From Ranitomeya imitator (taxonomy: Eukaryota): 64,000 nucleotides of DNA. Made by a program: the position numbers and the translations under genes. The first letter of the stretch is position 1, and each line of letters begins with the position of its first letter. The stretch lies in NCBI RefSeq assembly GCF_032444005.1, contig NC_091291.1:13578001-13642000 (forward strand), given 5' to 3'. Shown here piece after piece: positions 2,991-57,787 of the stretch. The notes under the pieces are model-generated. The model saw nothing but the letters and a program-made list of their open reading frames with translations. It made no database searches and was not told the origin of the DNA.

Positions 2991-3001
2991 GCGCTAGTGT
3001 A
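2991..3001 (-). promoter_or_regulatory. Non-tRNA primer-binding site TACACTAGCGC (self-priming type)
   Basis: Directly after the LTR CA end; complementary to minus-strand LTR sequence GCGCTAGTGTA at 3581-3571; no TGG tRNA-type start. Confidence 0.85.
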
Positions 3002-3002
3002 A

Positions 3003-3980
3003 TGTTAGGGCTAGCGGAACGCACCAAATAATGATACAGATAGAGTATGGTGCGTTCGCAGCCCGGGGTCCACCGTGCAGAGATGGAACCTGCTGCCAAG
3101 TAATGATGGACTATATGGCGGTACTCATAAGTATACACACGTGGGTTAGACTTCACCCAACGTGAAGGAAGCAATCCTGTTGCGTCACAGGATCGCGGTA
3201 CCGCACATAGAGCGCGAGCAAGTAGTCAGCGAACTCAACCCCAACTAGGATTGAAGTCCGATTAGACCCTTGCTGGCACAACACCGCAACTGGGTGTGTA
3301 AGGAAAATAACAATATTTAGGGCACAAGAGTGCATGCGGTGCCGCACTGACGAACGCCACTAACCACCCAGGCTTGGGTAAGGAAAGCACAGAGGAAGTG
3401 CACGGCGCCGTACTGGCGGTCACAGCAACTGGACGCTGTAATGTGTGATTTGTGCTGTAGGATAAGTCGGGCGCTAGATAGCAACCATACACCTTCCGCG
3501 AACAGACATTCAATAGGGAAGGGGTATCCAAGGACGACTTGCACTCACAACAAACACACGTATGCAAATGTACACTAGCGCATGGCCGTGCGGTCATGCG
3601 CAGTTTATATAGTTGCAGCACAGGAAGTGGCCACAGAAACTTTGCCCTTCCAAGACCTGCCAAGAGGACCAATGGAATGTGCTGCAGGGCCTGAGCACAT
3701 GACCCTCGATCTCCAACGGGAGATCTTGCCCTGGGCATGCTCAGTGTGTGCAGACAAGGACTTAGTCCCAGAGAAGTCTGCTCGCTGCTGACCAGCACTG
3801 GCTTTAATGGCAGAAGCTGAAGAAGCAGCAGTAACTCTCTGTACAGAGTGAGACTGAGCAAGACGCTGGGACCGACGTCCCTGCTGAGCAGACTCCACTG
3901 TGGCTGGATAAGAATGGGAGACCGCAGCGGAGATGGCTCGAGATTCCCCCTGTGCAGAAGCTGGAACTCGAGACCTAACA
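3003..3980 (-). repeat. 5' LTR of family A Gypsy (978 bp)
   Basis: Termini TGTTAGG...CCTAACA form an inverted repeat; lies 29 nt upstream of the gag ATG; minus-strand TATATAAA at 3611-3604. Confidence 0.92.
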
Positions 3981-31019: not shown

Positions 31020-31425
31020 CTGTAAATGGATGAACACAGAGGACAATTATCAGCAAGTAATTCACTGTTTAGATCAATAGTAGAATTTGCCATCAAACAA
31101 CTAAAAGACTGTGATTCAGAATAACACAGCAGAACAGAATAATAGAGCAGAGTCCTCTATTCAGGGTCCACATCTAACATTCATAGTATTTTTAAAAATT
31201 ATTTCCCATTTTGTCCTGATGTTGCTAGGCTGAATCCACTGAATTGGGTGAAGAGTTTAGCTGACTGGACGGGTTGTTGAAGCATATGGCTATGGTAAAG
31301 AATATTGCCGTACAGGAGACAGCTGGGAGATCAATGCCTGTGTGTCAGTGACTGAAAAACTGTAACTGCATGAGAGGGCTGCAACATGTGAAATTGCCCA
31401 GACAAAACTAATACCTGAGAATGGA

Positions 31426-34400
31426 GAGATCAGTGCCTGAGTCTCAGTTAGATCAGTGCCTGATTGTCAGTTAGGAGATCAGTACCTGAGTGTCAGTTGG
31501 GAGATCAGTGCCTGAGTGTCAGTTGGGAGATCAGTGCCTGATTGTCAGTTGGGAGATCAGTGCCTGAGTGTCAGTTGGGAGATCAGTGCCTGAGTGTCAG
31601 TTGGGAGATCAGTGCCTGATTGTCAGTTGGGAGATCAGTACCTGAGTGTCAGTTGGGAGATCAGTGCCTGAGTGTCAGTTAGATCAGTGCCTGAGTGTCA
31701 GTTGGGAGATCAGTGCCTAAGTGTCAGTTGGGAGATCAGTGCCTGAGTGTCAGTTGGGAGATCAGTGCCTGAGTTTCAGTTGGGAGATCATTACCTGAGT
31801 GTCAGTTGGGAGATCAGTGCCTGAGTGTCAGTTGGGAGATCAGTGCCTGAGTGTGAGTTGGGAGTTCAGTGCCTGAGTTTCAGTTGGGAGATCATTACCC
31901 GAGTGTCAGTTGGGAGATCAGTGCCTGAGTGACAGTTGGGAGTTCAGTGCCTGAGTGTCAGTTGGGAGATCAGTGCCTGAGTTTCAGTTGGAAGTTCAGT
32001 GCCTGAGTGTTAGTTGGGAGATCAGTGCCTGAGTTTCAGTTGGAAGTTCAGTGCCTGAGTGTTAGTTGGGAGATCAGTGCCTGAGTTTCAGTTGGAAGTT
32101 CAGTGCCTGAGTGTCAGTTGGGAGATCAGTGCCTGAGTGTTAGTTGGGAGATCAGTGCCTGAGTTTCAGTTGGAAGTTCAGTGCCTGAGTTTCAGTTGGA
32201 AGTTCAGTGCCTGAGTGTCAGTTGGGAGATCAGTGCCTGAGTGTTAGTTGGGAGATCAGTGCCTGAGTGTCAGTTGGGAGATCAGTGCCTGATTGTCAGT
32301 TGGGAGATCAGTGCCTGAGTGTCAGTTGGGAGTTCAGTGCCTGATTGTCAGTTGGGAGATCAGTGCCTGAGTGTCAGTTGGGAGTTCAGTGCCTGAGTGT
32401 CAGTTGGGAGATCAGTGCCTGAGTTTCAGTTGGAAGTTCAGTGCCTGAGTGTTAGTTGGGAGATCAGTGCCTGAGTTTCAGTTGGAAGTTCAGTGCCTGA
32501 GTGTTAGTTGGGAGATCAGTGCCTGAGTTTCAGTTGGAAGTTCAGTGCCTGAGTGTCAGTTGGGAGATCAGTGCCTGATTGTCAGTTGGGAGATCAGTGC
32601 CTGAGTGTCAGTTGGGAGTTCAGTGCCTGATTGTCAGTTGGGAGATCAGTGCCTGAGTGTCAGTTGGGAGATCAGTGCCTGAGTGTCAGTTGGGAGATCA
32701 GTACCTGAGTGTCAGTTAGATCAGTGCCTGAGTGTCAGTTGGGAGATCAGTGCCTAAGTGTCATTTGGGAGATCAGTGCCTGAGTGTCAGTTGGGAGATC
32801 AGTGCCTGAGTGTCAGTTGGGAGATCAGTGCCTGAGTGTCAGTTGGGAGATCAGTGCCTGATTGTCAGTTGGGAGTTCAGTGTCTGAGTGTCAGTTGGGA
32901 GACCAGTGCCTGAGTGTTAGTTGGGAGATCAGTACCTGAGTGTCAGTTGGGAGATCAGTGCCTGAGTGTCAGTTGGGAGATCAGTGCCTGAGTTTCAGTT
33001 GGGAGATCATTACCTGAGTGTCAGTTGGGAGATCAGTGCCTGAGTGTGAGTTGGGAGTTCAGTGCCTGAGTTTCAGTTGGGAGATCATTACCCGAGTGTC
33101 AGTTGGGAGATCAGTGCCTGAGTGACAGTTGGGAGATCAGTGCCTGAGTGTCAGTTGGGAGTTCAGTGCCTGAGTGTCAGTTGGGAGATCAGTGCCTGAG
33201 TTTCAGTTGGAAGTTCAGTGCCTGAGTGTTAGTTGGGAGATCAGTGCCAGAGTTTCAGTTGGAAGTTCAGTGCCTGAGTGTCAGTTGGGAGATCAGTGCC
33301 TGAGTGTCAGTTGGGAGATCAGTGCCTGAGTGTCAGTTGGGAGATCAGTGCCTGAGTGTCAGTTGGGAGTTCAGTGCCTGAGTTTCAGTTGGGAGATCAG
33401 TGCCTGAGTGTCAGTTGGGAGATCAGTGCCTGAGTTTCAGTTGGAAGTTCAGTGCCTGAGTGTCAGTTGGGAGATCAGTGCCTGAGTTTCAGTTGGGAGA
33501 TCGGTGCCTGAGTGTCAGTTGGGAGATCAGTGCCTGAGTATCAGTTGGGAGATCAGTGCCTGAGTTTCTGTTGGGAGATCAGTGCCTGAGTTTCAGTTGG
33601 GAGTTCAGTGCCTGAGTGTCAGTTGGGAGATCAGTGCCTGAGTTTCAGTTGGGAGATCAGTGCCTGAGTTTCAGTTGGGAGATCAGTGCCTGAGTTTCAG
33701 TTGGGAGATCAGTGCCTGAGTGTCAGTTGGGAGATCAGTGCCTGAGTTTCAGTTGGGAGATCAGTGCCTGAGTGTCAGTTGGGAGATCAGTGCCTGAGTT
33801 TCATTTGGGAGTTCAGTGCCTGAGTGTCAGTTGGGAGTTCAGTGCCTGAGTTTCAGTTGGGAGATCAGTGCCTGAGTGTCAGTTGGGAGATCAGTGCCTG
33901 AATTTCAGTTGGGAGATCAGTGCCTGAGTTTCAGTTGGGAGATCAGTGCCTGAGTTTCAGTTGGTAGTTCAGTGCCTAAGTGTCATTTGGGAGACCAGTG
34001 CCTGAGTGTCAGTTGGGAGATCAGTGCCTGAGTTTCATTTGGGAGACCAGTGCCTGAGTGTCAGTTGGGAGTTCAGTGCCTGAGTGTCAGTTGGTAGTTC
34101 AGTGCCTAAGTGTCATTTGGGAGACCAGTGCCTGAGTGTCAGTTGGGAGATCAGTGCCTGAGTTTCAGTTGGGAGTTCAGTGCCTAAGTGTCATTTGGGA
34201 GATCAGTACCTGAGTTTCAGTTGGGAGATCAGTGCCTAAGTGTCATTTGGGAGTTCAGTGCCTGAGTTTCAGTTGGGAGTTCAGTGCCTGAGTGTCAGTT
34301 GGCAGATCAGTGCCTGAGTTTCACTTGGGAGATCAGTGCCTGAGTGTCAGTTGGGAGATCAGTGCCTGAGTTTCAGTTGGGAGTTCTGTGCCTAAGTGTC

Positions 34401-35328
34401 ATTTGGGAGATCAGTGCCTGAGTGTCAGTTGGGAGATCAGTGCCTGAGTGTCAGTTGGGAGATCAGTGCCTGAGTTTCAGTTGGGAGATCAGTGCCTGAG
34501 TGTCAGTTGGGAGATCAGTGAATGAGTTTTAGTTGGGAGATCAGTGCCTGAGTGTCAGTTGGGAGATCAGTTCCTGAGTGTCAGTTGGGAGATCAGTGCC
34601 TGAGTTTCAGTTGGGAGACCAGTGCCTGAGTGTCATTTGGGAGATCAGTGCCTGAGATTCAGTTGGGAGTTCAGTGCCTGAGTGTCAGTTGGGAGATCAG
34701 TGCCTGAGTTTCAGTTGGGAGACCAGTGCCTGAGTGTCAGTTGGGAGATCAGTGCCTGAGTTCCAGTTGGGAGACCAGTGCCTGAGTTTCAGTTGGGAGT
34801 TCAGTGCCTGAGTGTCAGTTGGGAGATCAGTGCCTGAGTTCCAGTTGGGAGACCAGTGCCTGAGTGTCATTTGGGAGATCAGTACCTGAGTTTCAGTTGG
34901 GAGATCAGTGCCTAAGTGTCATTTGGGAGTTCAGTGCCTGAGTTTCAGTTGGGAGTTCAGTGCCTGAGTGTCAGTTGGGAGATCAGTGCCTGAGTTTCAG
35001 TTGGGAGATCAGTGCCTGAGTGTCAGTTGGGAGATCAGTGCCTGAGTTTCAGTTGGGAGATCAGTGCCTGAGTGTCAGTTGGGAGATCAGTGCCTGAGTG
35101 TCAGTTGGGAGATCAGTGCCTGAGTTTCAGTTGGGAGATCAGTGCCTGAGTGTCAGTTGGGAGATCAGTGCCTGAGTTTAAGTTGGGAGATCAGTGCCTG
35201 AGTTTAAGTTGGGAGATCAGTGCCTGAGTTTCAGTTGGGAGACCAGTGCCTGAGTTTCAGTTGGGAGATCAGTGCCTGAGTGTCAGTTGGGAGTTCAGTG
35301 CCTGAGTTTCAGTTGGGAGATCAGTGCC
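31426..35328. repeat. 26-bp tandem satellite (about 150 units) in the N-A intron
   Basis: Unit tcagttgggagatcagtgcctgagtg with scattered variants. Confidence 0.98.
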
Positions 35329-36422: not shown

Positions 36423-38355
36423 CTGAAAAGAAAAAGCAGAAATTAATGTAGTAGCGACTGATACAATAATGATTTATTGATTAATTCCTTCCACACAGCA
36501 TGCCGAGACCAAACAAGGCAAGTCTTTGTTGTCCAACAACCACAACCCCTTTGTATGAGAGACCAATGGCCAAACCCCATAACTTCCCTCTCCAAAATCT
36601 CTGAAGGGGAGCTTGCTCATCTTCTCTCCAAATCACACCTCACCACTTGTGCACTTGACCCCATCCCATCCCACCTCCTTCCCAACCTCACCACCACACT
36701 AATCCCATCCCTAACCCATCTCTTCAACCTTTCACTAACTTCTGGTACCTTCCCTTCTGCCTTCAAACATGCTACAATCACACCTATCCTCAAAAAGCCA
36801 TCCCTTGACCCAAGCTCTATGTCCAGCTATCGCCCCATATCTTTGCTCCCATTTGCTTCCCAACTCCTAGAGCAGCATGTCCATGCTGAACTTTCCTCTC
36901 ACTTTGCATCCAACTCTCTCTTCGACAACCTATAATCTGGCTTCCGTCCCCACCATTCCACTGAGACTGCCCTGACCAAAATTACTAACTACTTACTTAT
37001 AGCCAAAGCTAACAGACAATTCTCTATACTCCTCCTCCTAGACCTGTCCTCTGCCTTCGACACAGTTGACCACTGCCTCCTACTACAGATCCTCTCTTCC
37101 TTTGGGGTCAAAGACGTTGCCCTATCTTGAGTCTCCTCTTACCTTGCCAACCGCACATTTAGGGTTTCCTACTCCCATACTACCTCCTCATCTCGCCCCC
37201 TCTCTGTAGGAGTCCCCCAAGGCTCTGTCCTAGGACCCTTACTTTTCTCAATATATACACTCGGCCTGGGACAACTCATAAGGTCCTATGGCTTCTAGTA
37301 CCATCTATATGCCGATGACACTCAGATCTACCTCTCTGGCCCAGATGTCACCTCTCTGCTCTCCAGAATCCCAGAGTGTCTATCAGCCATATCCTCCTTC
37401 TTCTCCTCTCGCTTCCTCAAGCTCAATGTGGACAAATCTGAACTCATCATCTTTCCTCCATCACGAATATCTTCTCTACCTGATCTATCTATCAAAATAA
37501 ATGAAATCACACTTTCCCCTGTCCCCAAAATCCGCTGCCTCGGAGTAACCCTTGACTCCACCCTGTCCTTCAAACCACACATCCAAGCTCTCGCCACCTC
37601 CTGTCGCCTCCAGCTCAAAAATATTTCCAGAATCCGTCCTTTCCTCAACCCACATTCTACCAAAATGCTTGTGCATGCCCTAATCATCTCCTGCCTCGAC
37701 TACTGCAACATACTCCTCTGTGGCCTCCTGTTATGGCCGGCAATCAGGCAACACAGTGTGCAGTAATCAGCGCACATACAGAGATCTGGCAATAACCAAA
37801 AACAATAGGACGAGCTCTGAGACGTGGAATCTCTGTAGACTGCAGTACCTGATCTATCCTCACACAACTATAAGCAGCAGTGGATTGCGCCTATCACTAC
37901 CTATGCAACTCGGCACTGCCTGAGGAGCTGACTAGCCTGAAGATAGAAATACAAGCCTGACTTACCTCAGAGAAATACCCCAAAGGAATAGGCAGCCCCC
38001 CACATATAATGACTGTTAGCAAGATGAAAAGACAAACGTAGGAATGAAATAGATTCAGCAAAGTGAGGCCCGATATTCTAGACAGAGCGAGGATAGCAAA
38101 GAGAACTATGCAGTCTACAAAAAACCCTAAAACGAAAACCACGCAAAGGGGCAAAAAGACCCACCGTGCCGAACTAACAGCACGGCGGTGCACCCCTTTG
38201 CTTCTCAGAGCTTCCAGCAAAAGTTAATAGCAAGCTGGACAGAAAAAACAGAAAACAAACTAGAAGCACTTATCTAGCAGAGCAGCAGGCCCAAGGAAAG
38301 ATGCAGTAGCTCAGATCCAACACTGGAACATAGACAAGGAGCAAGGAAGACAGAC

Positions 38356-41300
38356 TCAGGTGGAGCTAAATAGCAAGGCAGCCAACGAGCTCACCAAAAC
38401 ACCTGAGGGAGGAAGCCCAGAGACTGCAATACCACTTGTGACCACAGAAGTGAATTCAGCCACAGAATTCACAACAGTACCCCCCCCTTGAGGAGGGGTC
38501 ACCGAACCCTCACCAGAACCCCCAGGCCGACCAGGATGAGCCACATGAAAGGCACGAACAAGATCTGGGGCATGGACATCAGAGGCAAAAACCCAGGAAT
38601 TATCTTCCTGAGCATAACCCTTCCATTTGACCAGATACTGGAGTTTCCGTCTAGAGACACGAGAATCCAAAATCTTCTCCACAATATACTCCAATTCCCC
38701 CTCCACCAAAACAGGGGCAGGAGGCTCCACAGATGGAACCATAGGTGCCACGTATCTCCTCAACAACGACCTATGGAATACATTATGTATGGAAAAGGAG
38801 TCTGGGAGGGTCAGACGAAAAGACACCGGATTGAGAATCTCAGAAATCCTATACGGACCAATAAAATGAGGTTTAAATTTAGGAGAGGAAACCTTCATAG
38901 GAATATGACGAGAAGATAACCAAACCAGATCCCCAACACGAAGTCGGGGTCCCACACGGCGTCTGCGATTAGCGAAAAGCTGAGCCTTCTCCTGGGACAA
39001 GGTCAAATTGTCCACTACCTGAGTCCAGATCTGCTGCAACCTGTCCACCACAGAATCCACACCAGGACAGTCCGAAGACTCAACCTGTCCTGAAGAGAAA
39101 CGAGGATGGAACCCAGAATTGCAGAAAAATGGAGAGACCAAGGTAGCCGAGCTGGCCCGATTATTAAGGGCGAACTCAGCCAACGGCAAAAATGACACCC
39201 AATCATCCTGGTCAGCGGAAACAAAACATCTCAGATATGTTTCCAAGGTCTGATTTGTTCGTTCGGTCTGGCCATTAGTCTGAGGATGGAAGGCCGAGGA
39301 GAAAGATAGGTCAATGCCCATCCTACCACAAAAGGCTCGCCAGAACCTCGAGACAAACTGGGAACCTCTGTCAGAAACAATATTCTCAGGAATGCCATGT
39401 AAACGAACCACATGCTGGAAGAACAAAGGCACCAAATCAGAGGAGGAAGGCAATTTAACCAAGGGCACCAGATGGACCATTTTAGAAAAGCGATAACAGA
39501 CCACCCAAATGACCGACATCTTTTGAGAAACGGGAAGGTCAGAAATGAAATCCATCGAAATATGTGTCCAAGGCCTCTTCGGGACCGGCAAGGGCAAAAG
39601 CAACCCACTGGCACGTGAACAGCAGGGCTTAGCCCTAGCACAAATTCCACAGGACTGCACAAAAGCACGCACATCCCGCGACAGAGACGGCCACCAGAAG
39701 GATCTAGCAACCAACTCCCTGGTACCAAAGATTCCTGGATGACCGGCCAGCACCGAACAATGAAGTTCAGAGATAACTTTACTAGTCCACCTATCAGGGA
39801 CGAACAGTTTCTCGGCCGGACAACGATCAGGTTTATTAGCCTGAAATTTCTGCAACACTCTCCGCAAATCAGGAGAGATGGCAGACACAATGACTCCTTC
39901 CTTGAGGATACTCGCCGGCTCAGATAACCCCGGAGAGTCGGGCACAAAACTCCTAGACAGAGCATCCGCCTTCACATTTTTAGAGCCCGGAAGGTATGAA
40001 ATCACAAAATCAAAACGAGCAAAAAATAACGACCAACGGGCCTGTCTAGGATTCAAGCGCTTGGCAGACTCAAGATAAGTAAGGTTCTTATGATCAGTCA
40101 AAACCACCACGCGATGCTTAGCACCCTCAAGCCAATGACGCCACTCCTCGAATGCCCACTTCATGGCCAGCAACTCTCGGTTGCCCACATCATAATTACG
40201 CTCAGCAGCAGAAAATTTCCTGGAAAAGAAAGCACATGGTTTGAACACTGAGCAACCAGAACCTCTCTGTGACAAAACCGCCCCTGCACCAATCTCAGAA
40301 GCATCAACCTCGACCTGGAACGGAAGAGAAACATCAGGTTGACACAACACAGGGGCACAGCAAAAACGACGCTTCAACTCCTGAAAAGCTTCCACGGCAG
40401 CAGAAGACCAATTAACCAAATCAGCACCCTTCTTGGTCAAATCGGTCAATGGTCTGGCAATGCTAGAAAAATTACAGATGAAGCGACGATAAAAATTAGC
40501 AAAGCCCAGGAATTTCTGCAGACTTTTTAGAGATGTCGGCTGGGTCCAATCCTGGATGGCCTGAACCTTAACCGGATCCATCTCGATAGTAGAAGGGGAA
40601 AAGATGAACCCCAAAAATGAAACTTTCTGCACACCGAAGAGACACTTTGATCCCTTCACGAACAAGGAATTAGCACGCAGTACCTGGAAAACCATTCTGA
40701 CTTGCTTCACATGAGACTCCCAATCATCTGAGAAGATCAAAATGTCATCCAAGTAAACAATCAAGAATTTATCCAGATACTCACGGAAAATGTCATGCAT
40801 AAAAGACTGAAAAACAGATGGAGCATTGGCAAGTCCGAACGGCATCACCAGATACTCAAAATGACCCTCGGGCGTATTAAATGCCGTTTTCCATTCATCT
40901 CCCTGCCTGATTCTCACCAGATTATACGCACCACGAAGATCAATCTTAGTAAACCAACTAGCCCCCTTAATCCGAGCAAACAAGTCAGAAATCAATGGCA
41001 AGGGATACTGAAACTTAACAGTGATCTTATTAAGAAGGCGGTAATCAATACACGGTCTTAGCGAACCATCCTTCTTGGCTACAAAAAAGAACCCTGCTCC
41101 CAATGGTGACGACGATGGGCGAATATGTCCCTTCTCCAGGGACTCCTTCACATAACTGCGCATAGCGGTGTGTTCAGGTACGGACAAATTAAATAAACGA
41201 CCCTTAGGGAATTTACTACCAGGAATCAAATCGATAGCACAATCACAATTCCTATGCGGAGGTAGGGCATCAGACTTGGACTCTTCAAATACATCCTGAA

Positions 41301-42807
41301 AGTCCGACAAGAACTCTGGGATGTCAGAAGGAATGGATGACGAAATAGACAAAAATGGAACATCACCATGTACCCCCTGACAACCCCAGCTGGTTACCGA
41401 CATAGAGTTCCAATCCAATACTGGATTATGGGTTTGTAGCCATGGCAACCCTAACACGACCACATCATGCAAATTATGCAGTACCAGAAAGCGAATAACT
41501 TCCTGATGTGCAGGAGCAATGCACATGGTCAGCTGGGCCCAGTACTGAGGCTTATTCTTGGCCAAAGGTGTAGCATCAATTCCTCTCAACGGAATAGGAC
41601 ACCGCAAAGGCTCCAAGAAAAATCCACAACGTTTAGCATAATCCAAATCCATCAGATTCAGGGCAGCGCCTGAATCCACAAACGCCATGACAGAATACGA
41701 TGACAAAGAGCACATTAAGGTAATGGACAAAAGGAATTTTGACTGTACAGTACCAATAACGGCAGAGCTATCGAACCGCCTAGTGCGTTTAGGACAATTA
41801 GAAATAGCATGAGTAGAATCACCACAATAGAAACACAGTCTGTTCAGACGTCTGTGTTCTTGCCGTTCTACTTTAGTCATAGTCCTGTCGCACTGCATAG
41901 GCTCAGGTTTACTCTCAGACAATACCGCCAGATGGTGCACAGATTTACGCTCGCGCAAGCGACGACCGATCTGAATGGCCAAGGACATAGACTCATTCAA
42001 ACCAGCAGGCATAGGAAATCCCACCATTACATCCTTAAGAGCTTCAGAGAGACCCTTTCTGAACAAAGCCGCTAGTGCAGATTCATTCCACAGAGTGAGT
42101 ACTGACCACTTCCTAAATTTCTGACAATATACTTTTACATCATCCTGACCCTGGCATAAAGCCAGCAGATTTTTCTCAGCCTGATCCACTGAATTAGGCT
42201 CATCGTAAAGCAATCCCAGCGCCTGGAAAAATGCATCAACATTACTCAATGCAGAATCTCCTGGTGCAAGAGAAAACGCCCAGTCCTGTGGGTCGCCGCG
42301 CAAAAAAGAAATAATAATCAAAACCTGTTGAATAGGATTACCAGAAGAATGAGGTTTCAAGGCCAAAAATAGCTTACAATTATTTCTGAAGCTCAAGAAC
42401 TTAGTTCTGTCACCAAAAAACAAATCAGGAATCGGAATTCTTGGTTCTAGCATCGATTTCTGATCAATAGTATCTTGAATCTTTTGTACATTTACAACGA
42501 GATTATCCATTGAGGAGCACAGAGCCTGAATATCCATGTCCACAGCTGTGTCCTGAAGCACTCTAATGTCTAGGGGAAAAAAAAGACTGAAGACAGAGCT
42601 AAGAAAAAAAAATGATGTCAGGATTTCTTTTTTCCCTCTATTGGGAATCATTGGTGGGCTCCTTGTACTGTTATGGCCGGCAATCAGGCAACACAGTGTG
42701 CAGTAATCAGCGCACATACAGAGATCTGGCAATAACCAAAAACAATAGGACGAGCTCTGAGACGTGGAATCTCTGTAGACTGCAGTATCTGATCTATCCT
42801 CACACAA
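38356..42807 (-). CDS. Single gag-pol polyprotein: gag, CCHC knuckle, protease, RT, RNase H, integrase, chromodomain (gag ATG probably 42537)
   Basis: 1483-aa uninterrupted ORF: CFYCGDSTHAISNC, FVDSGA, YLDD, EVDAS/TDHKNL, H-H-C-C, MDF/SDRG/ERTN, IGPY, EYIVEKILDSR...YLVKWKGY...NSW. Confidence 0.97.
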   Translation of the reverse strand: MCEDRSDTAVYRDSTSQSSSYCFWLLPDLCMCADYCTLCCLIAGHNSTRSPPMIPNRGKKEILTSFFFLSSVFSLFFPLDIRVLQDTAVDMDIQALCSSMDNLVVNVQKIQDTIDQKSMLEPRIPIPDLFFGDRTKFLSFRNNCKLFLALKPHSSGNPIQQVLIIISFLRGDPQDWAFSLAPGDSALSNVDAFFQALGLLYDEPNSVDQAEKNLLALCQGQDDVKVYCQKFRKWSVLTLWNESALAALFRKGLSEALKDVMVGFPMPAGLNESMSLAIQIGRRLRERKSVHHLAVLSESKPEPMQCDRTMTKVERQEHRRLNRLCFYCGDSTHAISNCPKRTRRFDSSAVIGTVQSKFLLSITLMCSLSSYSVMAFVDSGAALNLMDLDYAKRCGFFLEPLRCPIPLRGIDATPLAKNKPQYWAQLTMCIAPAHQEVIRFLVLHNLHDVVVLGLPWLQTHNPVLDWNSMSVTSWGCQGVHGDVPFLSISSSIPSDIPEFLSDFQDVFEESKSDALPPHRNCDCAIDLIPGSKFPKGRLFNLSVPEHTAMRSYVKESLEKGHIRPSSSPLGAGFFFVAKKDGSLRPCIDYRLLNKITVKFQYPLPLISDLFARIKGASWFTKIDLRGAYNLVRIRQGDEWKTAFNTPEGHFEYLVMPFGLANAPSVFQSFMHDIFREYLDKFLIVYLDDILIFSDDWESHVKQVRMVFQVLRANSLFVKGSKCLFGVQKVSFLGFIFSPSTIEMDPVKVQAIQDWTQPTSLKSLQKFLGFANFYRRFICNFSSIARPLTDLTKKGADLVNWSSAAVEAFQELKRRFCCAPVLCQPDVSLPFQVEVDASEIGAGAVLSQRGSGCSVFKPCAFFSRKFSAAERNYDVGNRELLAMKWAFEEWRHWLEGAKHRVVVLTDHKNLTYLESAKRLNPRQARWSLFFARFDFVISYLPGSKNVKADALSRSFVPDSPGLSEPASILKEGVIVSAISPDLRRVLQKFQANKPDRCPAEKLFVPDRWTSKVISELHCSVLAGHPGIFGTRELVARSFWWPSLSRDVRAFVQSCGICARAKPCCSRASGLLLPLPVPKRPWTHISMDFISDLPVSQKMSVIWVVCYRFSKMVHLVPLVKLPSSSDLVPLFFQHVVRLHGIPENIVSDRGSQFVSRFWRAFCGRMGIDLSFSSAFHPQTNGQTERTNQTLETYLRCFVSADQDDWVSFLPLAEFALNNRASSATLVSPFFCNSGFHPRFSSGQVESSDCPGVDSVVDRLQQIWTQVVDNLTLSQEKAQLFANRRRRVGPRLRVGDLVWLSSRHIPMKVSSPKFKPHFIGPYRISEILNPVSFRLTLPDSFSIHNVFHRSLLRRYVAPMVPSVEPPAPVLVEGELEYIVEKILDSRVSRRKLQYLVKWKGYAQEDNSWVFASDVHAPDLVRAFHVAHPGRPGGSGEGSVTPPQGGGTVVNSVAEFTSVVTSGIAVSGLPPSGVLVSSLAALLFSST
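38480..38489 (-). promoter_or_regulatory. Polypurine tract AAGGGGGGGG
   Basis: Directly upstream of the 3' LTR (GGGGGGGG-TAC-TG). Confidence 0.9.
42658..42666 (-). promoter_or_regulatory. Non-tRNA primer-binding site ACAAGGAGC (self-priming type)
   Basis: Follows LTR end CA + GT; complementary to minus-strand GCTCCTTGT at 43282-43274. Confidence 0.85.
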
Positions 42808-43306
42808 CTATAAGCAGCAGTGGATTGCGCCTATCACTACCTATGCAACTCGGCACTGCCTGAGGAGCTGACTAGCCTGAAGATAGAAATACAAGCCTGA
42901 CTTACCTCAGAGAAATACCCCAAAGGAATAGGCAGCCCCCCACATATAATGACTGTTAGCAAGATGAAAAGACAAACGTAGGAATGAAATAGATTCAGCA
43001 AAGTGAGGCCCGATATTCTAGACAGAGCGAGGATAGCAAAGAGAACTATGCAGTCTACAAAAAACCCTAAAACGAAAACCACGCAAAGGGGCAAAAAGAC
43101 CCACCGTGCCGAACTAACAGCACGGCGGTGCACCCCTTTGCTTCTCAGAGCTTCCAGCAAAAGTTAATAGCAAGCTGGACAGAAAAAACAGAAAACAAAC
43201 TAGAAGCACTTATCTAGCAGAGCAGCAGGCCCAAGGAAAGATGCAGTAGCTCAGATCCAACACTGGAACATAGACAAGGAGCAAGGAAGACAGACTCAGG
43301 TGGAGC

Positions 43307-43312
43307 TAAATA
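43307..43312 (-). promoter_or_regulatory. LTR TATA-like box TATTTA
   Basis: Its first base lies 30 nt upstream of the PBS-complementary sequence. Confidence 0.7.
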
Positions 43313-45784
43313 GCAAGGCAGCCAACGAGCTCACCAAAACACCTGAGGGAGGAAGCCCAGAGACTGCAATACCACTTGTGACCACAGAAGTGAATTCAGC
43401 CACAGAATTCACAACAGCCTCCCTTCTAACACTCACGCACCCCTCCAGTCCATCCTTAACTCTGCTGCCCAACTAATTAATCTCTCTCCTCGCTACACTC
43501 CTGCTTCAGCCCTTTGCAAATCCCTTCACTTCACTGGCTCCTAATTTCCCAGCGTATCCAGTTTAAATTACTAACACTGACCTACAAAGCCATCCACAAC
43601 CTTTCTCCTCCGTATATTTCCATACTAATCTCTCAATATCTTCCCTCACGAAATCTCAGGTCCTCCCAACACCTCCTCCTTTCCTCCACGCTTATTCGCT
43701 CCTCACTCAATCGCCTCCATAACTTCTCCCGAATATCACCCATCCTCTGGAATTCAGTGCCCCAACACATCCGGTTATCCACTACTTTTGGATCCTTCAA
43801 AAGAGACCTGAAAACCCGCCTCTTCAAGGAAGCTTACAGCCTGTAAAGACCACACGGCCACCTCAACACCACCGGAGCGCCTGCAACCCTCGACCTACTG
43901 TCTCCTTCCCCATAATCCTGTAGAATGTAAGCCCGCAAGGGAAGGTCCTCTTCCCTCTGTACCAGTCTGTCATTGTTAGTTTTGTAAGTAAGTGATATTT
44001 GTATTTTGATGTAACCCCTTCTCATGTACTGCACCATGGAATTAATGGTGCTATATAAATAAATAATAATAATAAAAATAATAATAATACCCTCCCCCGT
44101 GTCCAAAGCCGGAGGTTGGGCACCATCTGGTAACCCACAGTGCCTACACAGGGCCAGTTAAAGCTCCTGAAATTGCTTAACCCCTTTCTGACATGGGACG
44201 TACTATCCCGTCGAGGTGGGGTGGGCCCCTATGACCATGGACGGGATAGTACGTCCAGCGCGATCGGCGGCACTCACGGGGGGAGCGCCGCCGATCGCGG
44301 CCGGGTGTCAGCTGCCTATCGCAGCTGACATCCGGCACTATGTGCCAGGAGCGGTCGCGGACCGCCCCCGGTACATTAACCCCTGGCACACCGCGATCAA
44401 AGATGATCGCGATGTGCCGGCGGTGCAGGGAAGCATCGCGCAGGGAGGGGGCTACCTGCGGGCTTCCCTGAGCCCCCCGCAGCAACACGATGTGATCGCG
44501 TTGCTGCGAGGGTCTCCTCACCTCCCTCCCTGCTCGAGCCCCGGATCCAAGATGGCCGCGGATCTGGGTCCTGCAGGGAGGGAGGTGGCTTCACAGAGCC
44601 TGCTCAGAGCAGGCATTGTGAAGGCTGCAGCGCTGCATGTCAGATCAGTGATCTGACAGAGTGCTGTGCAAACTGTCAGATCACCGATCTGTGATGTCCC
44701 CCCCGGGACAAAGTAAAAAAGTAAAAAAAAAATTTTTCAAATGTGTAAAAAAAAAATAAAAAAAAATATTCCAAAATAATGAAAAAAAAAAAATATTATT
44801 CCCATAAATACATTTCTTTATCTAAATAAAAAAAACAAAACAATAAAAGAACATATATTTAGTATCGCCGCATCCGTAACGGCCCGACCTATAAAACTGG
44901 CCCACTAGTTAACCCTTTCAGTAAACACCGTAAGAAAAAAAAAAAAAAACGAGGCAAAAAACAACGCTTTATTATCATACTGCCGAACAAAAAGTGGAAT
45001 AACACGCGATCAAAAATACAGATATAAATAACCAGGGTACCTCTGAAAACGTCATCTTGTCCCGCAAAAAACAAGCCACCATACAACATCATCAGCAAAA
45101 AAATAAAAAAGTTATAGTCCTAAGAATAAAGCGATGCAAAAATAATTATTTTTTCTATAAAATAGTTTTTATCGTATAAAAGCGCCAAAACATAAAAAAA
45201 TGATATAAATGAGGTGTCGCTGTAATCGTACTGACCCGAAGAATAAAACTGCTTTATCAATTTTACCAAACGCGGAACGGAATAAACGCCTCCCCCAAAA
45301 GAAATTCATGAATAGCTGGTTTTTGGTCATTCTGCCTCACAAAAATCGGAATAAAAAGCGATTAAATAATGTCACGTGGCCGATAATGTTACCAATAAAA
45401 ACATCAACTCGTCCCGCAAAAAACAAGACCTTACATGACTCTGTGGACCAAAATATGGAAAAATTATAGCTCTCAAAATGTGGTAACGCAAAAAATATTT
45501 TTTGCAATAAAAAGCGTCTTTCAGTGTGTGACGGCTGCCAATCATAAAAATCCGCTAAAAAAACAGCTATAAAAGTAAATCAAACCCCCCTTCATCACCC
45601 CCTTAGTTAGGGAAAAATTAAAAAAATGTATTTATTTNNNNNNNNNNNNNNNNNNNNNNNNNNNNNNNNNNNNNNNNNNNNNNNNNNNNNNNNNNNNNNN
45701 NNNNNNNNNNNNNNNNNNNNNNNNNNNNNNNNNNNNNNNNNNNNNNNNNNNNNNNNNNNNNNNNNNNNNNNNNNNNNNNNNNNN

Positions 45785-46359: not shown

Positions 46360-48720
46360 TTGTGGGGTTTCCACTGTTTAGGCACATCAGGGGCTCTCCA
46401 AACGCGACATGGCGTCCGATCTCAATTCCAGCCAATTCTGCGTTGAAAAAGTAAAACAGTGCTCCTTCCCTTCTGAGCTCTCCCGTGTGCCCAAACAGGG
46501 GTTTACCCCAACATATGGAGTATCAGCGTACTCAGGACAAATAGGACAACAACTTTTGGGGTCCAATTTCTCCTGTTACCCTTGGGAAAATACAAAACTG
46601 GGGGCTAAAAAATAATTTTTGTGGGAAAAAAAAAGATTTTTTTATTTTCACGGCTCTGCGTTATAAACTGTAGTGAAACACTTGGGGGTTCAAAGTTCTC
46701 ACAACACATCTAGATTAGTTCCCTGGGGGGTCTAGTTTCCAATATGGGGTCACTTGTGGGGGGTTTCTACTGTTTAGGTACATTAGGGGTTCTGCAAACG
46801 CAATGTGACGCCTGCAGACCATTCCATCTAAGTCTGCATTCCAAATGGCGCTCCTTCCCTTCCGAGCTCTACCATGCGCTCAAACCGTGGTTCCCCCCAA
46901 CATACGGGGTATCAGCGTACTCAGGACAAATTGGACAACAACTTCTGGGGTCGAATTTCTCCTCTTACCCACGGGAAAATACAAAACTGGGGGCTAAAAA
47001 ATAATTTTGGGGGGAAAGATTTTTTTTTTAAATTTTCACGGCTCTGCGTTACAAACTGTAGTGAAACACTTGGGGGTTCAAAGCTATCACAACACATCTA
47101 GATGAGTTCCTTAGGGTGTCTAGTTTCCAATATGGGGTCATTTGTGGGAGGTTTCTACTGTTTAGGTATATTAGGGGCTCTGCAAATGCAATGTGACACC
47201 TGCAGACCATTCCATCTAAGTCCTCATTCCAAATGGAGCTCCTTCCCTTCCGAGCCCTCCCATGCGCCCAAACAGTGGTTCCCCCCCACATATGGGGTAT
47301 CAGCGCACTCAGGACAAATTGGACAACAAATTGTGGGGTCCAATTCCTCCTGTTACCCTCGGGAAAATACAAAACTGGGGGCTAAAAAATAATTTTTGTG
47401 GGAAAAAATTTTTGTTTTATTTTTACGGCTCTCCATTATAAACTTCTGTGAAGCCCTTGGTGGGTCAAAGCGCTCAGCACACATCTCGATAAGTTCCTAA
47501 GGGGGTCTACTTTCCAAAATGGTCACTTGTGGGGGGTTTCTACTGTTTAGGTACATTAGGGGCTCTGCAAACGCAATGTGACACCTGCAGACCATTCCAT
47601 CTAAGTCTGCATTCAAATGGCACTCCTTCCCTTTCAAGCCCTCCCATGTGCCCAAACAGTGGTTCCCCCCACATATGGTGTATCATCGCACTCAGGACAA
47701 ATTGGACAACAAATTTTGGGGTCCAGTTTCTCCTGTTACCCTCGGGAAAATACAAAACTGGGGGCTAAAAAAATAATTTTTGTGGGAAAAAAATTTTGTT
47801 TTATTTTTACGGCTCTGCATTATAAACTTCTGTGAAGCTCTTGGTGGGTCAAAGTGCTCACCACACCTCTAGATAAGTTCTCCTTAGGGGGTCTACTTTC
47901 CAAAATGGTGTCATTTGTGGGGGGTTTCAATGTTTAGGCACATCAGTGGCTCTTCAAACGCAACATGGCGTCCCATCTCAATTCCTGTCAATTTTGCATT
48001 GAAAAGTCAATCGGCGCTCCTTCCCTTCCGAGCTCTCCCATCCGCCCAAACAGTGGTTTACCCCCACATATGGGCTATCAGCGTACTCAGGACAAATTGT
48101 ACAACAACTTTTGGGGTCCAATTTCTTCTCTTACCCTTGGGAAAATAAAAAATTGGTGGCGAAAAGATAATTTTTGTGAAAAAATATGATTTTTTATTTT
48201 TACGGATCTACATTATAAACTTCTGTGAAGCACTTGGTGGGTCAAAGTGCTCACCACACCTCTATATAAGTTCCTTAGGGGGTCTACTTTCCAAAATGGT
48301 GTCACTTGTGGGGGGTTTCAATGTTTAGGCACATCAGGGGCTCTCCAAACGAAACATGGCATCCCATCTCAATTCCAGTCAATTTTGCATTGAAAAGTCA
48401 AATGGCGCTCCTTCGCTTCCGAGCTCTGCCATGCGCCCAAACAGTGGTTTACCCCCACATGTGGGGTATTGGCGTACTCAGGACAAATTGTACAACAATG
48501 TTTGGGGTCCATTTTCTCCTGTTACCCTTGGTAAAATAAAACAAATTGGAGCTGAATTAAATTTTTTGTGAAAAAAAGTTAAATGTTCATTTTTATTTAA
48601 ACATTCAAAAAATTCCTGTGAAGCACCAGAAGGGTTAATAAACTTCTTGAATATGGTTTTGAGCACCTTGAGGGGTGTAGTTTTTAGAATGGTGTCACAC
48701 TTGGGTATTTTCTATCATAT
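46360..48720. repeat. Six tandem units of 383-395 bp
   Basis: Anchor motif caggacaaat with GG at 46535, 46924, 47312, 47695, 48090 and 48481. Confidence 0.9.
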
Positions 48721-50776: not shown

Positions 50777-51595
50777 TGTTATGACCTGGTGGTAAGGACA
50801 ATAATGGACCTGGTGGTTAAGAGCACACGGAATGACCTGATAGTTACTGATAATATAGGACGAGCTCTGAGACGTGGGAACTCTGCTGACCGCAATCCCT
50901 AATCCTATCACACACACTAGAAATAGCCGTGGATTGCTCCTAACGCTCCCTATGCAACTCGACACAGCCTAAGGAACTAGCTAGCCCTGAAGATAGAAAA
51001 ATAAACCTACCTTGCCTCAGAGAAATTCCCCAAAGGAAAAGGCAGCCCCCACATATAATGACTGTGAGTAAAGATGAAAATACAAACACAGAGATGAAAT
51101 AGATTTAGCAAAGTGAGGCCCGACTTACTGAACAGACTGAGGATAGGAAAGGTAACTTTGCGGTCAGCACAAAAAACTACAAAAAGACCACGCAGAGGGC
51201 GCAAAAGACCCTCCGCACCGACTCACGGTGCGGAGGTGCTCCCTCTGCGTCCCAGAGCTTCCAGCAAGCAAGACAAAAATCAAAATAGCAAGCTGGACAG
51301 AAGAATAGCAAACTAAAGAAAAACAAGCAGGAACTTAGCTTCTGCTGGGAAGACAGGTCACAAGAACGATCCAGGAGTGAACTAGACCAATACTGGAACA
51401 TTGACAGGTGGCATGGAGCAATGATCTAAGTGGAGTTAAATAGAGCAGCCAGCTAACGAATTAACCTCGTCACCTGTGGAAGGAACCTCAGAAGCAGCAG
51501 CTCCACCCACAACCACCAGAGGAAGCCCATGGACAGAACCAGCCGAAGTACCATTCATGACCACAGGAGGGAGCTTGACAACAGAATTCACAACA
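50777..51595 (-). mobile_element. Solo LTR, sister lineage of family B (819 bp)
   Basis: Plus-strand TGTTATG...CACAACA; 6-bp TSD GTTTAC; long blocks shared with the 37729 LTR (ataggacgagctctgagacgtgg, cctgaagatagaaa, aagtgaggcccga). Confidence 0.93.
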
Positions 51596-56400: not shown

Positions 56401-57787
56401 TGTCAGAGGCCCTCCTACAGCAGCACAGAGAATGACAGAGGACCTCGTACAGCAGCGCAGAGAATGTCAGAGGACCTCCTACAGCAGCACAGAGAATGTC
56501 AGAGGACCTCCTACAGCAGCACAGAGAATGTCAGAGGCCTTCCCACAGCAGCACAGAGAATGTCAGAGGACCTCCTACAGCAGCACAGAGAATGACAGAG
56601 GACCTCTTACAGCAGCACAGAGAATGTCAGAGGACCTCCTACAGCAGCACAGAGAATGTCAGAGGACCTCCTACAGCAGCACAGAGAATGTCAGAGGACC
56701 TCCTACAGCAGCACAGAGAATGACAGAGGACCTCCTACAGCAGCACAGAGAATGACAGAGGACCTCCTACAGCAGCACAGAGAATGTCAGAGGCCTTCCC
56801 ACAGCAGCACAGAGAATGTCAGAGGACCTCCTACAGCAGCACAGAGAATGACAGAGGACCTCCTACAGCAGCACAGAGAATGACAGAGGACCTCTTACAG
56901 CAGCACAGAGAATGACAGAGGACCTCCTACAGCAGCACAGAGAATGACAGAGGACCTCTTACAGCAGCACAGAGAATGACAGAGGACCTCCTACAGCAGC
57001 ACAGAGAATGTCAGAGGACCTCGTACAGCAGCACAGAGAATGTCAGAGGACCTCGTACAGCAGCACAGAGAATGTCAGAGGACCTCCTACAGCAGCACAG
57101 AGAATGTCAGAGGACCTCCTACAGCAGCACAGAGAATGTCAGAGGACCTCGTACAGCGGCACAGAGAATGTCAGAGGCCCTCCTACAGCAGCGCAGAGAA
57201 TGACAGAGGACCTCCTACAGCAGCACAGAGAATGTCAGAGGACCTCCTACAGCAGCACAGAGAATGACAGAGGACCTCCTACAGCAGCACAGAGAATGTC
57301 AGAGGACCTCCTACAGCAGCGCAGAGAATGTCAGAGGACCTCCTACAGCAGCACAGAGAATGTCAGAGGACCTCCTACAGCAGCGCAGAGAATGTCAGAG
57401 GACCTCCTACAGCAGCACAGAGAATGTCAGAGGACCTCGTACAGCGGCACAGAGGATGTCAGAGGACCTCGTACAGCGGCACAGAGGATGTCCGAGGCCT
57501 TCCCACAGCAGCTCATTTGAATCATCTGAGCTGCGCAGGACTGAAGTCTGGAATTCCGCTGCTGGGAGAGTCGGGATTCCTCTGTCAGCCAGACTCATTG
57601 TGAACTTTCTCTGTCTCTCTCTCTGTTTCTCCTCTCTCTCCTCGTCAATTACCGGTCTCCCGGAAAAATTCTCGAGTCCTTCATTGACTTACATCATGTT
57701 AGGCACTCAAGTTGAGCCGGTCCGAACATCCAACCTGCTCACTTCGAGTACCGAGCACTCGAGCAGCTTACTGCTCCCTCATCACTA
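53426..57787. mobile_element. Non-autonomous hAT-type element carrying a 3.8-kb satellite
   Basis: TIR CAGTGATGGG...CCTCATCACTA; 8-bp TSD ATAAATAT/ATAAATAG (7/8); ends resemble the 6891-7201 MITE family. Confidence 0.8.
53691..57512. repeat. 32-bp tandem satellite (about 119 units)
   Basis: Unit cacagcagcacagaggaagtcagaggccctgc, changing to tacagcagcacagagaatgtcagaggacctcc in the right half. Confidence 0.98.

What the first reader, a model, noticed from the sequence alone, without database searches (positions are those of the whole stretch)
42658..43312. Independent second case of self-priming: family B PBS also pairs with the TATA+30 sequence
Seen: the LTR end CA-GT is followed by ACAAGGAGC; its complement GCTCCTTGT starts at 43282, exactly 30 nt after the first T of TATTTA (43312). 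The primer sequence differs from family A but the geometry is the same. The 2-nt spacer GT mirrors AC before the 3' LTR TG, predicting cDNA ends AC-TG...CA-GT. Two families with matched but different PBS/5'-end pairs is natural covariation supporting a Tf1-like mechanism, here with a predicted 9-nt primer.
Basis: partly seen in the sequence, partly recalled or inferred. Interest (0 to 1): 0.75.

Follow-up and report, generated by a model that had tools for sequence, protein, structure and literature searches.

The report
Self-priming frog Gypsy retrotransposon, confirmed
An intact jumping gene in a poison-frog genome almost certainly starts copying itself with the first nine bases of its own RNA instead of a borrowed tRNA; this trick is already known from yeast Tf1 and fish sushi elements, so the case is well supported but ordinary.

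Summary
On the minus strand, the 5' LTR (43416-42669) ends in CA. It is followed by GT and then ACAAGGAGC (42666-42658). The complement, GCTCCTTGT, lies at 43282-43274, 30 nt after the first T of the only TATA-like box (43312).

For this element alone the match is only suggestive: 1.8% of dinucleotide shuffles of the LTR contain the 9-mer. Relatives settle it.
- Seven subfamilies in Ranitomeya imitator contigs carry seven different 9-mers at the homologous LTR position. Each is matched exactly by its own PBS.
- Family A in the window and three distant relatives (43-54% protein identity) show the same geometry.
- RNAalifold finds the helix unaided. All 72 cells are Watson-Crick, with no G-U.
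- The PBS predicted from the window's solo LTR was found in full-length sister copies.

The element is an intact, young chromodomain Ty3/gypsy element with one gag-pol ORF, LTRs that differ at one base, and a 6-bp target duplication. I place it in the vertebrate Tf1/sushi (V-clade) group, where self-priming is already described. It is therefore a new member of a known kind.

The scan noted the same signature on other DNA of this genome, and follow-up s1-294759 reached the same verdict. The transcription start and the RNase H cut remain untested.

The parts
42669..43416 (-). 5' LTR of element B (748 nt, TG...CA)
   Evidence: Self-BLAST pair with 37729-38476, with 1 mismatch in 748 nt.
43307..43312 (-). 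TATTTA, the only TATA-like hexamer in the LTR (LTR position 105)
   Evidence: Motif scan. It is conserved as TATTTA[AG] in the sister LTRs.
43274..43282 (-). GCTCCTTGT, the predicted first 9 nt of the transcript and self-primer
   Evidence: Exact complement of the PBS, 30 nt after the TATA-like box, with T/G at -1/+1. It covaries with the PBS in relatives.
42667..42668 (-). GT spacer between the LTR CA and the PBS
   Evidence: Read directly. It is identical in all B-lineage copies.
42658..42666 (-). Primer-binding site ACAAGGAGC
   Evidence: It closes the predicted leader fold in both the single-sequence MFE and the centroid structure.
38356..42537 (-). Single intact gag-pol ORF (1393 aa): gag with CCHC, protease, RT, RNase H, integrase, SH3_Tf2-1 and chromodomain
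   Evidence: Translation and Pfam hits.
38480..38489 (-). Polypurine tract AAGGGGGGGG, followed by TAC and then the 3' LTR TG
   Evidence: The ...GGGTAC|TG junction is conserved at eight 3' LTR junctions; one copy (L007) has TTC instead.
37729..38476 (-). 3' LTR of element B; it carries a second copy of the 9-mer at 38342-38334
43417..43422 (-). Target-site duplication GGAGGC, upstream copy
37723..37728 (-). Target-site duplication GGAGGC, downstream copy
   Evidence: Four more full-length copies in the fetched loci, and the solo LTR in the window, also have 6-bp duplications.
43143..43151 (-). 5' arm of a long-range leader helix (GCTCTGAGA), pairing with 42762-42754
   Evidence: It lies in the RNAalifold consensus; pair 195/583 shows one compensatory change (UA in one copy), and copy L002_12394 has matching arms AGCTCTGGGATG / CATCCCAGAGCT.
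43049..43059 (-). 5' arm of a nested leader helix (TGTAGACTGCA), pairing with 42784-42774
   Evidence: The sister copies carry TGCTGACCGCAA / TTGCGGTCAGCA at the same place, which is compensatory.
50777..51595 (-). Solo LTR of a sister subfamily. It has TATTTAA at 51442-51436 and GCCACCTGT at 51412-51404 (+30), and a GTAAAC target duplication.
   Evidence: The PBS it predicts, ACAGGTGGC, was found after the homologous LTR in three full-length sister copies in L001 and L003.
2991..3611 (-). Family A 5' LTR region: TATATAAA 3611-3604, GCGCTAGTGT 3581-3572, CA-TT-PBS ACACTAGCGC 3000-2991
   Evidence: Family A is a related chromovirus lineage with 35-50% protein identity to B.

Best explanation
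Element B (window 43416-37729, minus strand) is an intact, recently inserted chromodomain Ty3/gypsy retrotransposon of the vertebrate Tf1/sushi (V-clade, Amn/Sushi-like) group. I propose that it primes its own reverse transcription in the following steps. (1) RNA polymerase II starts about 30 nt after the TATTTA box, at the G of GCUCCUUGU (inferred). (2) The 640-nt R-U5 leader folds into nested long-range helices. The outermost stem pairs transcript nt 1-9 with the PBS, which lies 2 nt past the LTR (the pairing is shown by covariation; the fold is predicted). (3) The element's RNase H cuts after nt 9 and frees a 3'-OH (inferred from Tf1). (4) Reverse transcriptase extends this primer through GU and U5-R, so the linear cDNA ends read AC-TG...CA-GT, and integrase trims them to CA (inferred). 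(5) Plus-strand synthesis copies the primer, so the PBS is rewritten as its exact complement in every cycle (inferred). Step 5 would explain why the pair drifts quickly between subfamilies yet stays strictly Watson-Crick.
For: Anatomy: the LTRs differ at 1 of 748 nt, there is a 6-bp target duplication, and one 1393-aa gag-pol ORF carries every domain plus SH3_Tf2-1 and Chromo. Geometry: the PBS starts at CA+2 and its complement at TATA+30. Covariation: the B lineage has seven pair types in five Ranitomeya imitator loci. The 5' 9-mers are GCTCCTTGT, GCCACCTGT, GCTTCCAGT, GCCAGCTGT, GCCAGTTGT, GCTTCCTGT and GCCACTTGT, and each faces its exact complement after CA-GT. By my count, linking the seven types needs at least eight substitutions, each compensated in the PBS. 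Family A and relatives L005, L004 and L008 (54, 51 and 43% protein identity) have other pairs in the same geometry. RNAalifold on eight leaders recovers the helix unaided (columns 1-9 with 696-704): 5 of 9 pairs have changes on both sides and none is broken. The pair count gives 100% paired cells, 0 of 500 shuffles reach the observed percentage paired or covariation score, and slid registers drop to 26-50% paired. The helix is 72/72 Watson-Crick. The other predicted helices hold 117 G-U and 39 unpaired cells among 864. The MFE and centroid folds of the B leader alone close with the same 9 bp, with z = -3.5. T/G at -1/+1 in 13 of 14 copies fits a pyrimidine-purine initiator. Literature: self-priming is the common feature of Tf1/sushi elements (PMC6317226; 10.1101/2022.12.06.519325). 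In Tf1 the first 11 nt pair with the PBS and RNase H cuts between nt 11 and 12 (PMC7175516).
Against: No transcript, cDNA or biochemical data were available, so the start site at 43282, the cut after nt 9 and the priming itself are inferred. For element B alone, the 9-mer match arises by chance in about 2% of shuffled LTRs. Of the three-duplex 'pretzel' structure described for Tf1, only the central duplex is supported here. A 4-bp UGUU/AACA duplex next to it is predicted but invariant, and a third duplex was not found. The leader between primer and PBS is about 605 nt, much longer than I recall for Tf1 (from memory, not checked). The LTR has no AATAAA or ATTAAA hexamer, so the extent of R is undefined. 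Placement beside Tf1 and sushi-ichi rests on domain architecture and literature, not on a tree made here.
Confidence: 0.85

Rival explanations
1. The 9-bp pairing is real RNA structure but serves another purpose, such as leader cyclisation for packaging, dimerisation or translation control. Minus-strand synthesis would then be primed by something else.
For: The helix is the closing stem of a large covarying leader fold with 27 compensatory pairs, so it could be one structural helix among many. No priming data exist.
Against: The 3' arm sits exactly where a primer must anneal, 2 nt past the LTR CA, in every lineage. No other primer site is visible: there is no TGG-type PBS. The helix has no G-U and no mismatch, unlike every other helix of the fold. 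That fits templated copying of the primer rather than selection on RNA folding alone. The 5' arm always begins at TATA+30/31, as expected for an RNA 5' end.
Confidence: 0.06
2. A host tRNA, tRNA fragment or other host small RNA primes at this PBS, and the LTR complement is incidental.
For: Most LTR elements use tRNAs, and some use internal tRNA segments. I had no frog tRNA set to compare: ARAGORN found no tRNA genes in the window or the loci.
Against: The PBS never begins with TGG. It differs at up to four of its five variable positions between subfamilies living in the same genome, and each time the element's own LTR changes in step. A fixed host RNA cannot follow seven different sequences.
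Confidence: 0.03
3. The complementarity is a chance match in a pyrimidine-rich LTR.
For: 1.8% of dinucleotide-preserving shuffles of the LTR contain the 9-mer, and 4.9% do if seven PBS offsets are allowed.
Against: Twelve independent pair types share the same geometry. 0 of 500 column shuffles reach the observed pairing. The PBS predicted from the solo LTR was found in sister copies.
Confidence: 0.01

Closest known systems
Tf1 and Tf2 of Schizosaccharomyces pombe (founding self-priming elements, Tf1/sushi group)
   Same: Chromodomain Ty3/gypsy element with a single gag-pol ORF. There is no tRNA-type PBS. The first bases of its own transcript are complementary to a PBS just past the 5' LTR, and that central duplex sits within a folded 5' leader (PMC7175516; 10.1101/2022.12.06.519325).
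   Different: The predicted primer is 9 nt, against 11 nt in Tf1. About 605 nt separate primer and PBS, so the helix closes a large multi-helix leader rather than a compact 'pretzel', and the two flanking pretzel duplexes are not demonstrated. The target duplication is 6 bp; I recall 5 bp for Tf1 (from memory). Nothing has been tested experimentally here.
Vertebrate Tf1/sushi elements: sushi-ichi of Takifugu and the Amn-ichi/ni/san 'V-clade' chromoviruses of fish, amphibians and reptiles (Butler et al. 2001; Llorens et al. 2009)
   Same: Same host range and architecture. Amn-san-like chromodomain elements are the most abundant and most transcribed LTR elements in frogs (PMC4131045). Self-priming has been described for the vertebrate members (PMC6317226, citing Butler 2001). 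The fish-like relative L008 fetched here has the same geometry.
   Different: These are Ranitomeya imitator families, and I found no published description of them. The Butler 2001 paper is not in the library, so I could not compare primer lengths or sequences with sushi-ichi. No phylogeny against the reference elements was made.
Tcn1-clade chromoviruses of fungi and non-seed plants, and TAR-lineage Ty1/copia elements of plants (predicted self-primers)
   Same: Self-priming there is also predicted from complementarity between the PBS and the transcript 5' end (PMC6317226).
   Different: Different lineages and hosts. The comparison rests on the literature only.
tRNA-primed retroviruses and LTR elements (for example HIV-1 and Ty3)
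   Same: The PBS lies 2 nt past the LTR CA, there is a polypurine tract, and the predicted linear cDNA ends are AC-TG...CA-GT. Ty3 is the closest solved structure for RT and integrase (7q5b, E = 3e-139).
   Different: The primer is the element's own RNA rather than a host tRNA, so the PBS is free to drift, and it does.

Membership tests
Tf1/sushi group (V-clade) chromoviruses, Ty3/gypsy | LTR element with pol domains in the order PR-RT-RNase H-IN | tested here: met
   Pfam hits in the order gag, protease, RVT_1, RT_RNaseH, Integrase_H2C2, rve. TG...CA LTRs and a 6-bp target duplication.
Tf1/sushi group (V-clade) chromoviruses, Ty3/gypsy | Chromodomain at the C-terminus of integrase | tested here: met
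   PF00385 Chromo at residues 1300-1347 (E = 3.4e-13), preceded by PF24626 SH3_Tf2-1.
Tf1/sushi group (V-clade) chromoviruses, Ty3/gypsy | gag and pol in a single ORF | tested here: met
   One uninterrupted 1393-aa ORF from ATG 42537 to the stop codon at 38358-38356.
Tf1/sushi group (V-clade) chromoviruses, Ty3/gypsy | PBS complementary to the 5' end of the element's own transcript and not to a tRNA 3' end | tested here: met
   A 9-nt exact complement at TATA+30 that covaries in 12 pair types, with no TGG start. That the complement is the true RNA 5' end is inferred, not measured.
Tf1/sushi group (V-clade) chromoviruses, Ty3/gypsy | Three-duplex 'pretzel' leader structure around the PBS | tested here: inconclusive
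   The central duplex is well supported. A 4-bp duplex between nt 13-16 and the last 4 nt of U5 is predicted but invariant. A third duplex was not recovered in cofolds of 11 elements.
Tf1/sushi group (V-clade) chromoviruses, Ty3/gypsy | RNase H cleavage of the RNA duplex releases the primer, and the primer is extended into strong-stop cDNA | not testable with these tools
   This needs biochemistry or sequencing of cDNA intermediates.
Tf1/sushi group (V-clade) chromoviruses, Ty3/gypsy | Phylogenetic grouping of RT-IN with Tf1, sushi-ichi and Amn elements | not tested
The indirect evidence is that full-length relatives are frog and fish proteins, some of which sources name 'Transposon Tf2-x polyprotein', and that chromodomain Gypsy elements of frogs are classed as Amn-san / V-clade (PMC4131045, PMC2774666).
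tRNA-primed LTR retroelements | PBS complementary to the 3' end (…CCA) of a host tRNA, and therefore starting with TGG and conserved within a host | tested here: not met
   The PBS starts with AC, and it differs among seven subfamilies of one genome.

The most novel reading that the evidence does not exclude
The primer/PBS pair may act as a fast-drifting, self-correcting 'address'. If the PBS is rewritten from the primer in every replication cycle, a single change at the transcript 5' end becomes fixed as a perfect new pair. The different pairs carried by subfamilies in one genome would then limit priming across subfamilies when RNAs are co-packaged. On this reading the diversity of pairs would be a mechanism of lineage isolation and not only neutral drift.
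Probability: 0.15. Interest if true: 0.5.

Novelty: new member of a known kind. Interest (0 to 1): 0.3.

Why it matters
The mechanism is established for Tf1 in fission yeast, but to my knowledge (not checked against the literature) it has only been predicted from sequence in vertebrates. This frog genome offers an unusually clean natural data set. Many young subfamilies carry different, always perfect primer/PBS pairs at homologous positions. One copy is intact and very recent. The long, covarying leader fold differs from the compact Tf1 structure. Together these make vertebrate self-priming easy to test with transcript-start mapping and cDNA-end sequencing. The result also has a practical use for annotation. 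In amphibian genomes these very abundant elements lack a tRNA-type PBS, so pipelines that require one will miss or misclassify them. The TATA+30/PBS rule predicts the PBS from a solo LTR, as shown here.

Tried and rejected
- A plain direct-repeat search was swamped by tandem arrays. I replaced it with a self-BLAST.
- A chance match was considered and quantified: 1.8% for this LTR alone. It was rejected on covariation.
- A tRNA primer could not be compared directly, because ARAGORN found no tRNA genes in the window or in five frog loci. It was rejected on PBS variability and the lack of a TGG start.
- Rfam gave no match in 42400-43500 at E <= 1.
- A search for a polyadenylation signal in R-U5 found no AATAAA or ATTAAA, and no shared hexamer within one mismatch of AATAAA, in eight B-lineage leaders. 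The R/U5 boundary stays unknown.
- The 'pretzel' flanking duplexes were not convincingly recovered.
- The apparent LTR-internal-LTR runs in L001 and L002 looked at first like Tf1-style tandem insertions. Judging from the BLAST layout and one junction, they are more likely nested and truncated insertions. I did not pursue this.
- Lin & Levin 1997 and Atwood-Moore 2006 are not held in the library, and Butler 2001 could only be cited through papers that cite it.
- The circular Logan unitig L005 cannot reveal a transcript start, because the LTR is collapsed in the assembly.
The consensus line that the alignment tool prints was ignored.
Full report
**Observation**

- The 5' LTR ends ...CCGGCCATAACA, with the final CA at 42670-42669.
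- It is followed by GT (42668-42667) and ACAAGGAGC (42666-42658).
- The reverse complement, GCTCCTTGT, lies at 43282-43274.
- TATTTA lies at 43312-43307, so the 9-mer begins 30 nt after the first T.
- The 9-mer has three matches in the 64-kb window, counting both strands: one in each LTR, and the PBS read on the opposite strand.
- The bases flanking the pairing would be T:C and C:T, so the helix is exactly 9 bp.
- The 3' LTR is preceded by AAGGGGGGGG-TAC, so AC before its TG mirrors GT after the 5' LTR CA.

**The element**

Self-BLAST and direct reading give two 748-nt LTRs, 43416-42669 and 38476-37729. They differ at one position and are flanked by a 6-bp target duplication, GGAGGC.

Between the LTRs runs one uninterrupted gag-pol ORF of 1393 aa, from the ATG at 42537 to the stop codon at 38358-38356. 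Pfam finds Retrotrans_gag, an aspartic protease, RVT_1, RT_RNaseH, Integrase_H2C2, rve, SH3_Tf2-1 and a C-terminal chromodomain. The usual catalytic motifs are readable in the translation.

The element is therefore an intact, very young chromovirus of the Ty3/gypsy superfamily. Protein hits place the window in the mimic poison frog Ranitomeya imitator. Ty3 is the closest solved structure.

**Chance for this element alone**

The LTR is pyrimidine-rich and the 9-mer is built from common dinucleotides.
- 362 of 20000 dinucleotide-preserving shuffles of the LTR contain the 9-mer somewhere (1.8%).
- 4.9% contain a match if any of seven PBS offsets is allowed.

TATTTA is the only TATA-like hexamer in the LTR. 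Requiring the match at TATA+30 makes chance much less likely. Even so, a single element is only suggestive.

**Covariation, the decisive test**

I fetched five Ranitomeya contig stretches that carry diverged relatives of the polyprotein and aligned the LTR-to-gag regions.

At the position homologous to 43282-43274, the sister LTRs carry other 9-mers. After the conserved CATAACA-GT, each copy carries the exact complement of its own 9-mer.

| 5' 9-mer | PBS |
|---|---|
| GCTCCTTGT | ACAAGGAGC |
| GCCACCTGT | ACAGGTGGC |
| GCTTCCAGT | ACTGGAAGC |
| GCCAGCTGT | ACAGCTGGC |
| GCCAGTTGT | ACAACTGGC |
| GCTTCCTGT | ACAGGAAGC |
| GCCACTTGT | ACAAGTGGC |

The first two and the last two bases are invariant, and the middle five vary. 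By my count, linking the seven types needs at least eight substitutions, each compensated in the PBS.

The solo LTR in the window (51595-50777) has GCCACCTGT at TATA+30. That predicts the PBS ACAGGTGGC, and this PBS was found in three full-length sister copies. A prediction made from this window is thus confirmed on other DNA.

The same geometry holds outside the B lineage.

| Element | Protein identity to B | TATA-like box | 5' partner | Spacer and PBS |
|---|---|---|---|---|
| Family A (window) | 35-50% | TATATAAA | GCGCTAGTGT | TT-ACACTAGCGC |
| L005 (Logan contig) | 54% | TATTTAAA | GCCTGTTAT | GA-ATAACAGGC |
| L004 (ENA contig) | 51% | TTTAAAT | GCGGTTTAT | TT-ATAAACCGC |
| L008 (fish-like) | 43% | CATAAAAG | GCGAAGTC (8 nt) | GAA-GACTTCGC |

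In all of them the 5' partner begins 30 or 31 nt after the TATA-like box. T/G sits at -1/+1 in 13 of 14 copies, which fits a pyrimidine-purine initiator.

**Formal counts**

I aligned eight B-lineage leaders from the predicted start to just past the PBS (A1).
- RNAalifold recovered the helix between columns 1-9 and 696-704 without being told. Every sequence is paired at all nine positions, and five pairs have changes on both sides.
- Counting that helix alone gives 100% paired cells and 13 cells changed on both sides. 0 of 500 column shuffles reach the observed percentage paired or the covariation score. Sliding the 3' arm by 1-3 columns drops pairing to 26-50%.

**The leader fold**

The same RNAalifold run predicts 121 pairs, of which 27 have compensatory changes. 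They form nested long-range helices inside the primer/PBS stem. Two examples are 43151-43143 with 42762-42754, and 43059-43049 with 42784-42774.

Folding the B leader alone gives MFE and centroid structures that both close with the same 9 bp. The z-score is -3.5 against 20 shuffles.

So the roughly 605 nt between primer and PBS appear to be drawn together by a structured R-U5.

**Watson-Crick only**

The primer/PBS helix has 72 of 72 Watson-Crick cells. The other predicted helices hold 708 Watson-Crick, 117 G-U and 39 unpaired cells. Restricted to variable pairs, the contrast is 40/40 against 332/432. Fisher's test gives p of about 7e-5, although the cells are not independent.

Selection on RNA folding alone tolerates G-U. 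A helix that never shows G-U while drifting quickly fits a PBS that is recopied from the primer in each cycle. This is my inference. It agrees with the report that much Tf1 cDNA carries a reverse-transcribed PBS copy at its 3' end (PMC11042837).

**Rival explanations**
- A host tRNA or other fixed host RNA cannot follow seven PBS variants within one genome, and no PBS starts with TGG.
- A purely structural role is less likely. The 3' arm lies exactly at CA+2, where a primer must sit. The 5' arm always starts at the expected RNA 5' end. The helix also behaves differently from every other helix of the fold.
- Chance is excluded.

**Comparison with what is known**

Self-priming was discovered in Tf1. 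Its first 11 nt pair with the PBS, and RNase H cuts between nt 11 and 12 (PMC7175516). It is described as the common feature of the Tf1/sushi group, vertebrate members included, and comes with a three-duplex 'pretzel' structure (10.1101/2022.12.06.519325; PMC6317226, both citing Butler et al. 2001).

Chromodomain Gypsy elements of frogs are classed as Amn-san / V-clade, which is part of that group (PMC2774666, PMC4131045).

The frog element meets the architectural criteria and the complementarity criterion. The differences I could see are these.
- The predicted primer is 9 nt (10 nt in family A, 8 nt in L008).
- The leader is much longer and has many helices.
- The target duplication is 6 bp.
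- Only the central pretzel duplex is supported.

I made no tree with the reference elements.

**Verdict**

It is strengthened well beyond the two-family argument. However, this is a new member of a known kind and not a new mechanism.

The scan had already noted the same signature on other pieces of this genome, and one follow-up (s1-294759) reached the same conclusion.

The open points are the real transcription start, the cleavage site, and the extent of R. No canonical polyadenylation hexamer exists anywhere in these LTRs.

Noticed in passing
window 42669-43416 and the aligned sister leaders (A1): The B-lineage LTRs contain no AATAAA or ATTAAA, and no shared hexamer within one mismatch of AATAAA, anywhere in U3, R or U5. 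The fish-like relative L008 does have AATAAA about 45 nt before its LTR end. How and where these frog transcripts are polyadenylated is unexplained.
   Followed up: partly
window 43282-42658 (the R-U5 leader): The leader is predicted to form a large nested fold: 121 consensus pairs, 27 of them with compensatory changes across eight subfamily copies. The primer/PBS helix is its closing stem. This is far larger than the compact structure described for Tf1.
   Followed up: partly
window 43100-43130, minus strand: An 11-bp hairpin (CACCGCCGTGC ... GCACGGTGGG) sits inside a longer stem and is followed by TCTTTTTGC. It covaries in the sister LTRs, where the arms are CCTCCGCACC / GGTGCGGAGG. Its function is unknown.
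   Followed up: partly
window 42651-42649, minus strand: An upstream ATG lies 7 nt after the PBS and is in frame with gag in this copy. The motif AATG is conserved at this place in the sister copies. A T-run of variable length lies between it and the gag ATG at 42537, so it is probably a short upstream ORF rather than the real start.
   Followed up: no
L002:7592-7901: A B-lineage copy has only 167 nt between its self-primer (GCCAGTTGT) and its PBS, against about 610-650 nt in the others. If this copy is functional, most of the long leader is dispensable.
   Followed up: no
L007:31884: At the 3' LTR junction of this copy the bases before TG are TTC, not the TAC seen at eight other junctions. 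Its PBS spacer is still GT, so the AC/GT end symmetry is not perfect in every copy.
   Followed up: no
window 43417-43825 and 17230-17633: The DNA immediately upstream of element B is 74% identical to another stretch of the window. Element B therefore appears to have landed inside an older repeat.
   Followed up: no
window 31320-35100, 53591-57400, 9250-11305, 46361-48577, 15261-15930: There are several long tandem arrays. The first two have periods of 26 nt and 32 nt, with about 145 and about 117 registers. The 32-nt array gives spurious ORFs of 352 and 258 aa.
   Followed up: no
L005 (Logan SRR32659494 contig, 4900 nt): The two ends of the contig overlap by 30 nt. It is therefore a circular unitig with the two LTRs collapsed into one, not a circular molecule.
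   Followed up: yes
L001:19100-29100 and L002:8000-18000: These stretches hold runs of LTR-internal-LTR-internal made of different B subfamilies. From the BLAST layout and one junction they look like nested and truncated insertions, not tandem elements that share an LTR. The junctions were not examined one by one.
   Followed up: partly
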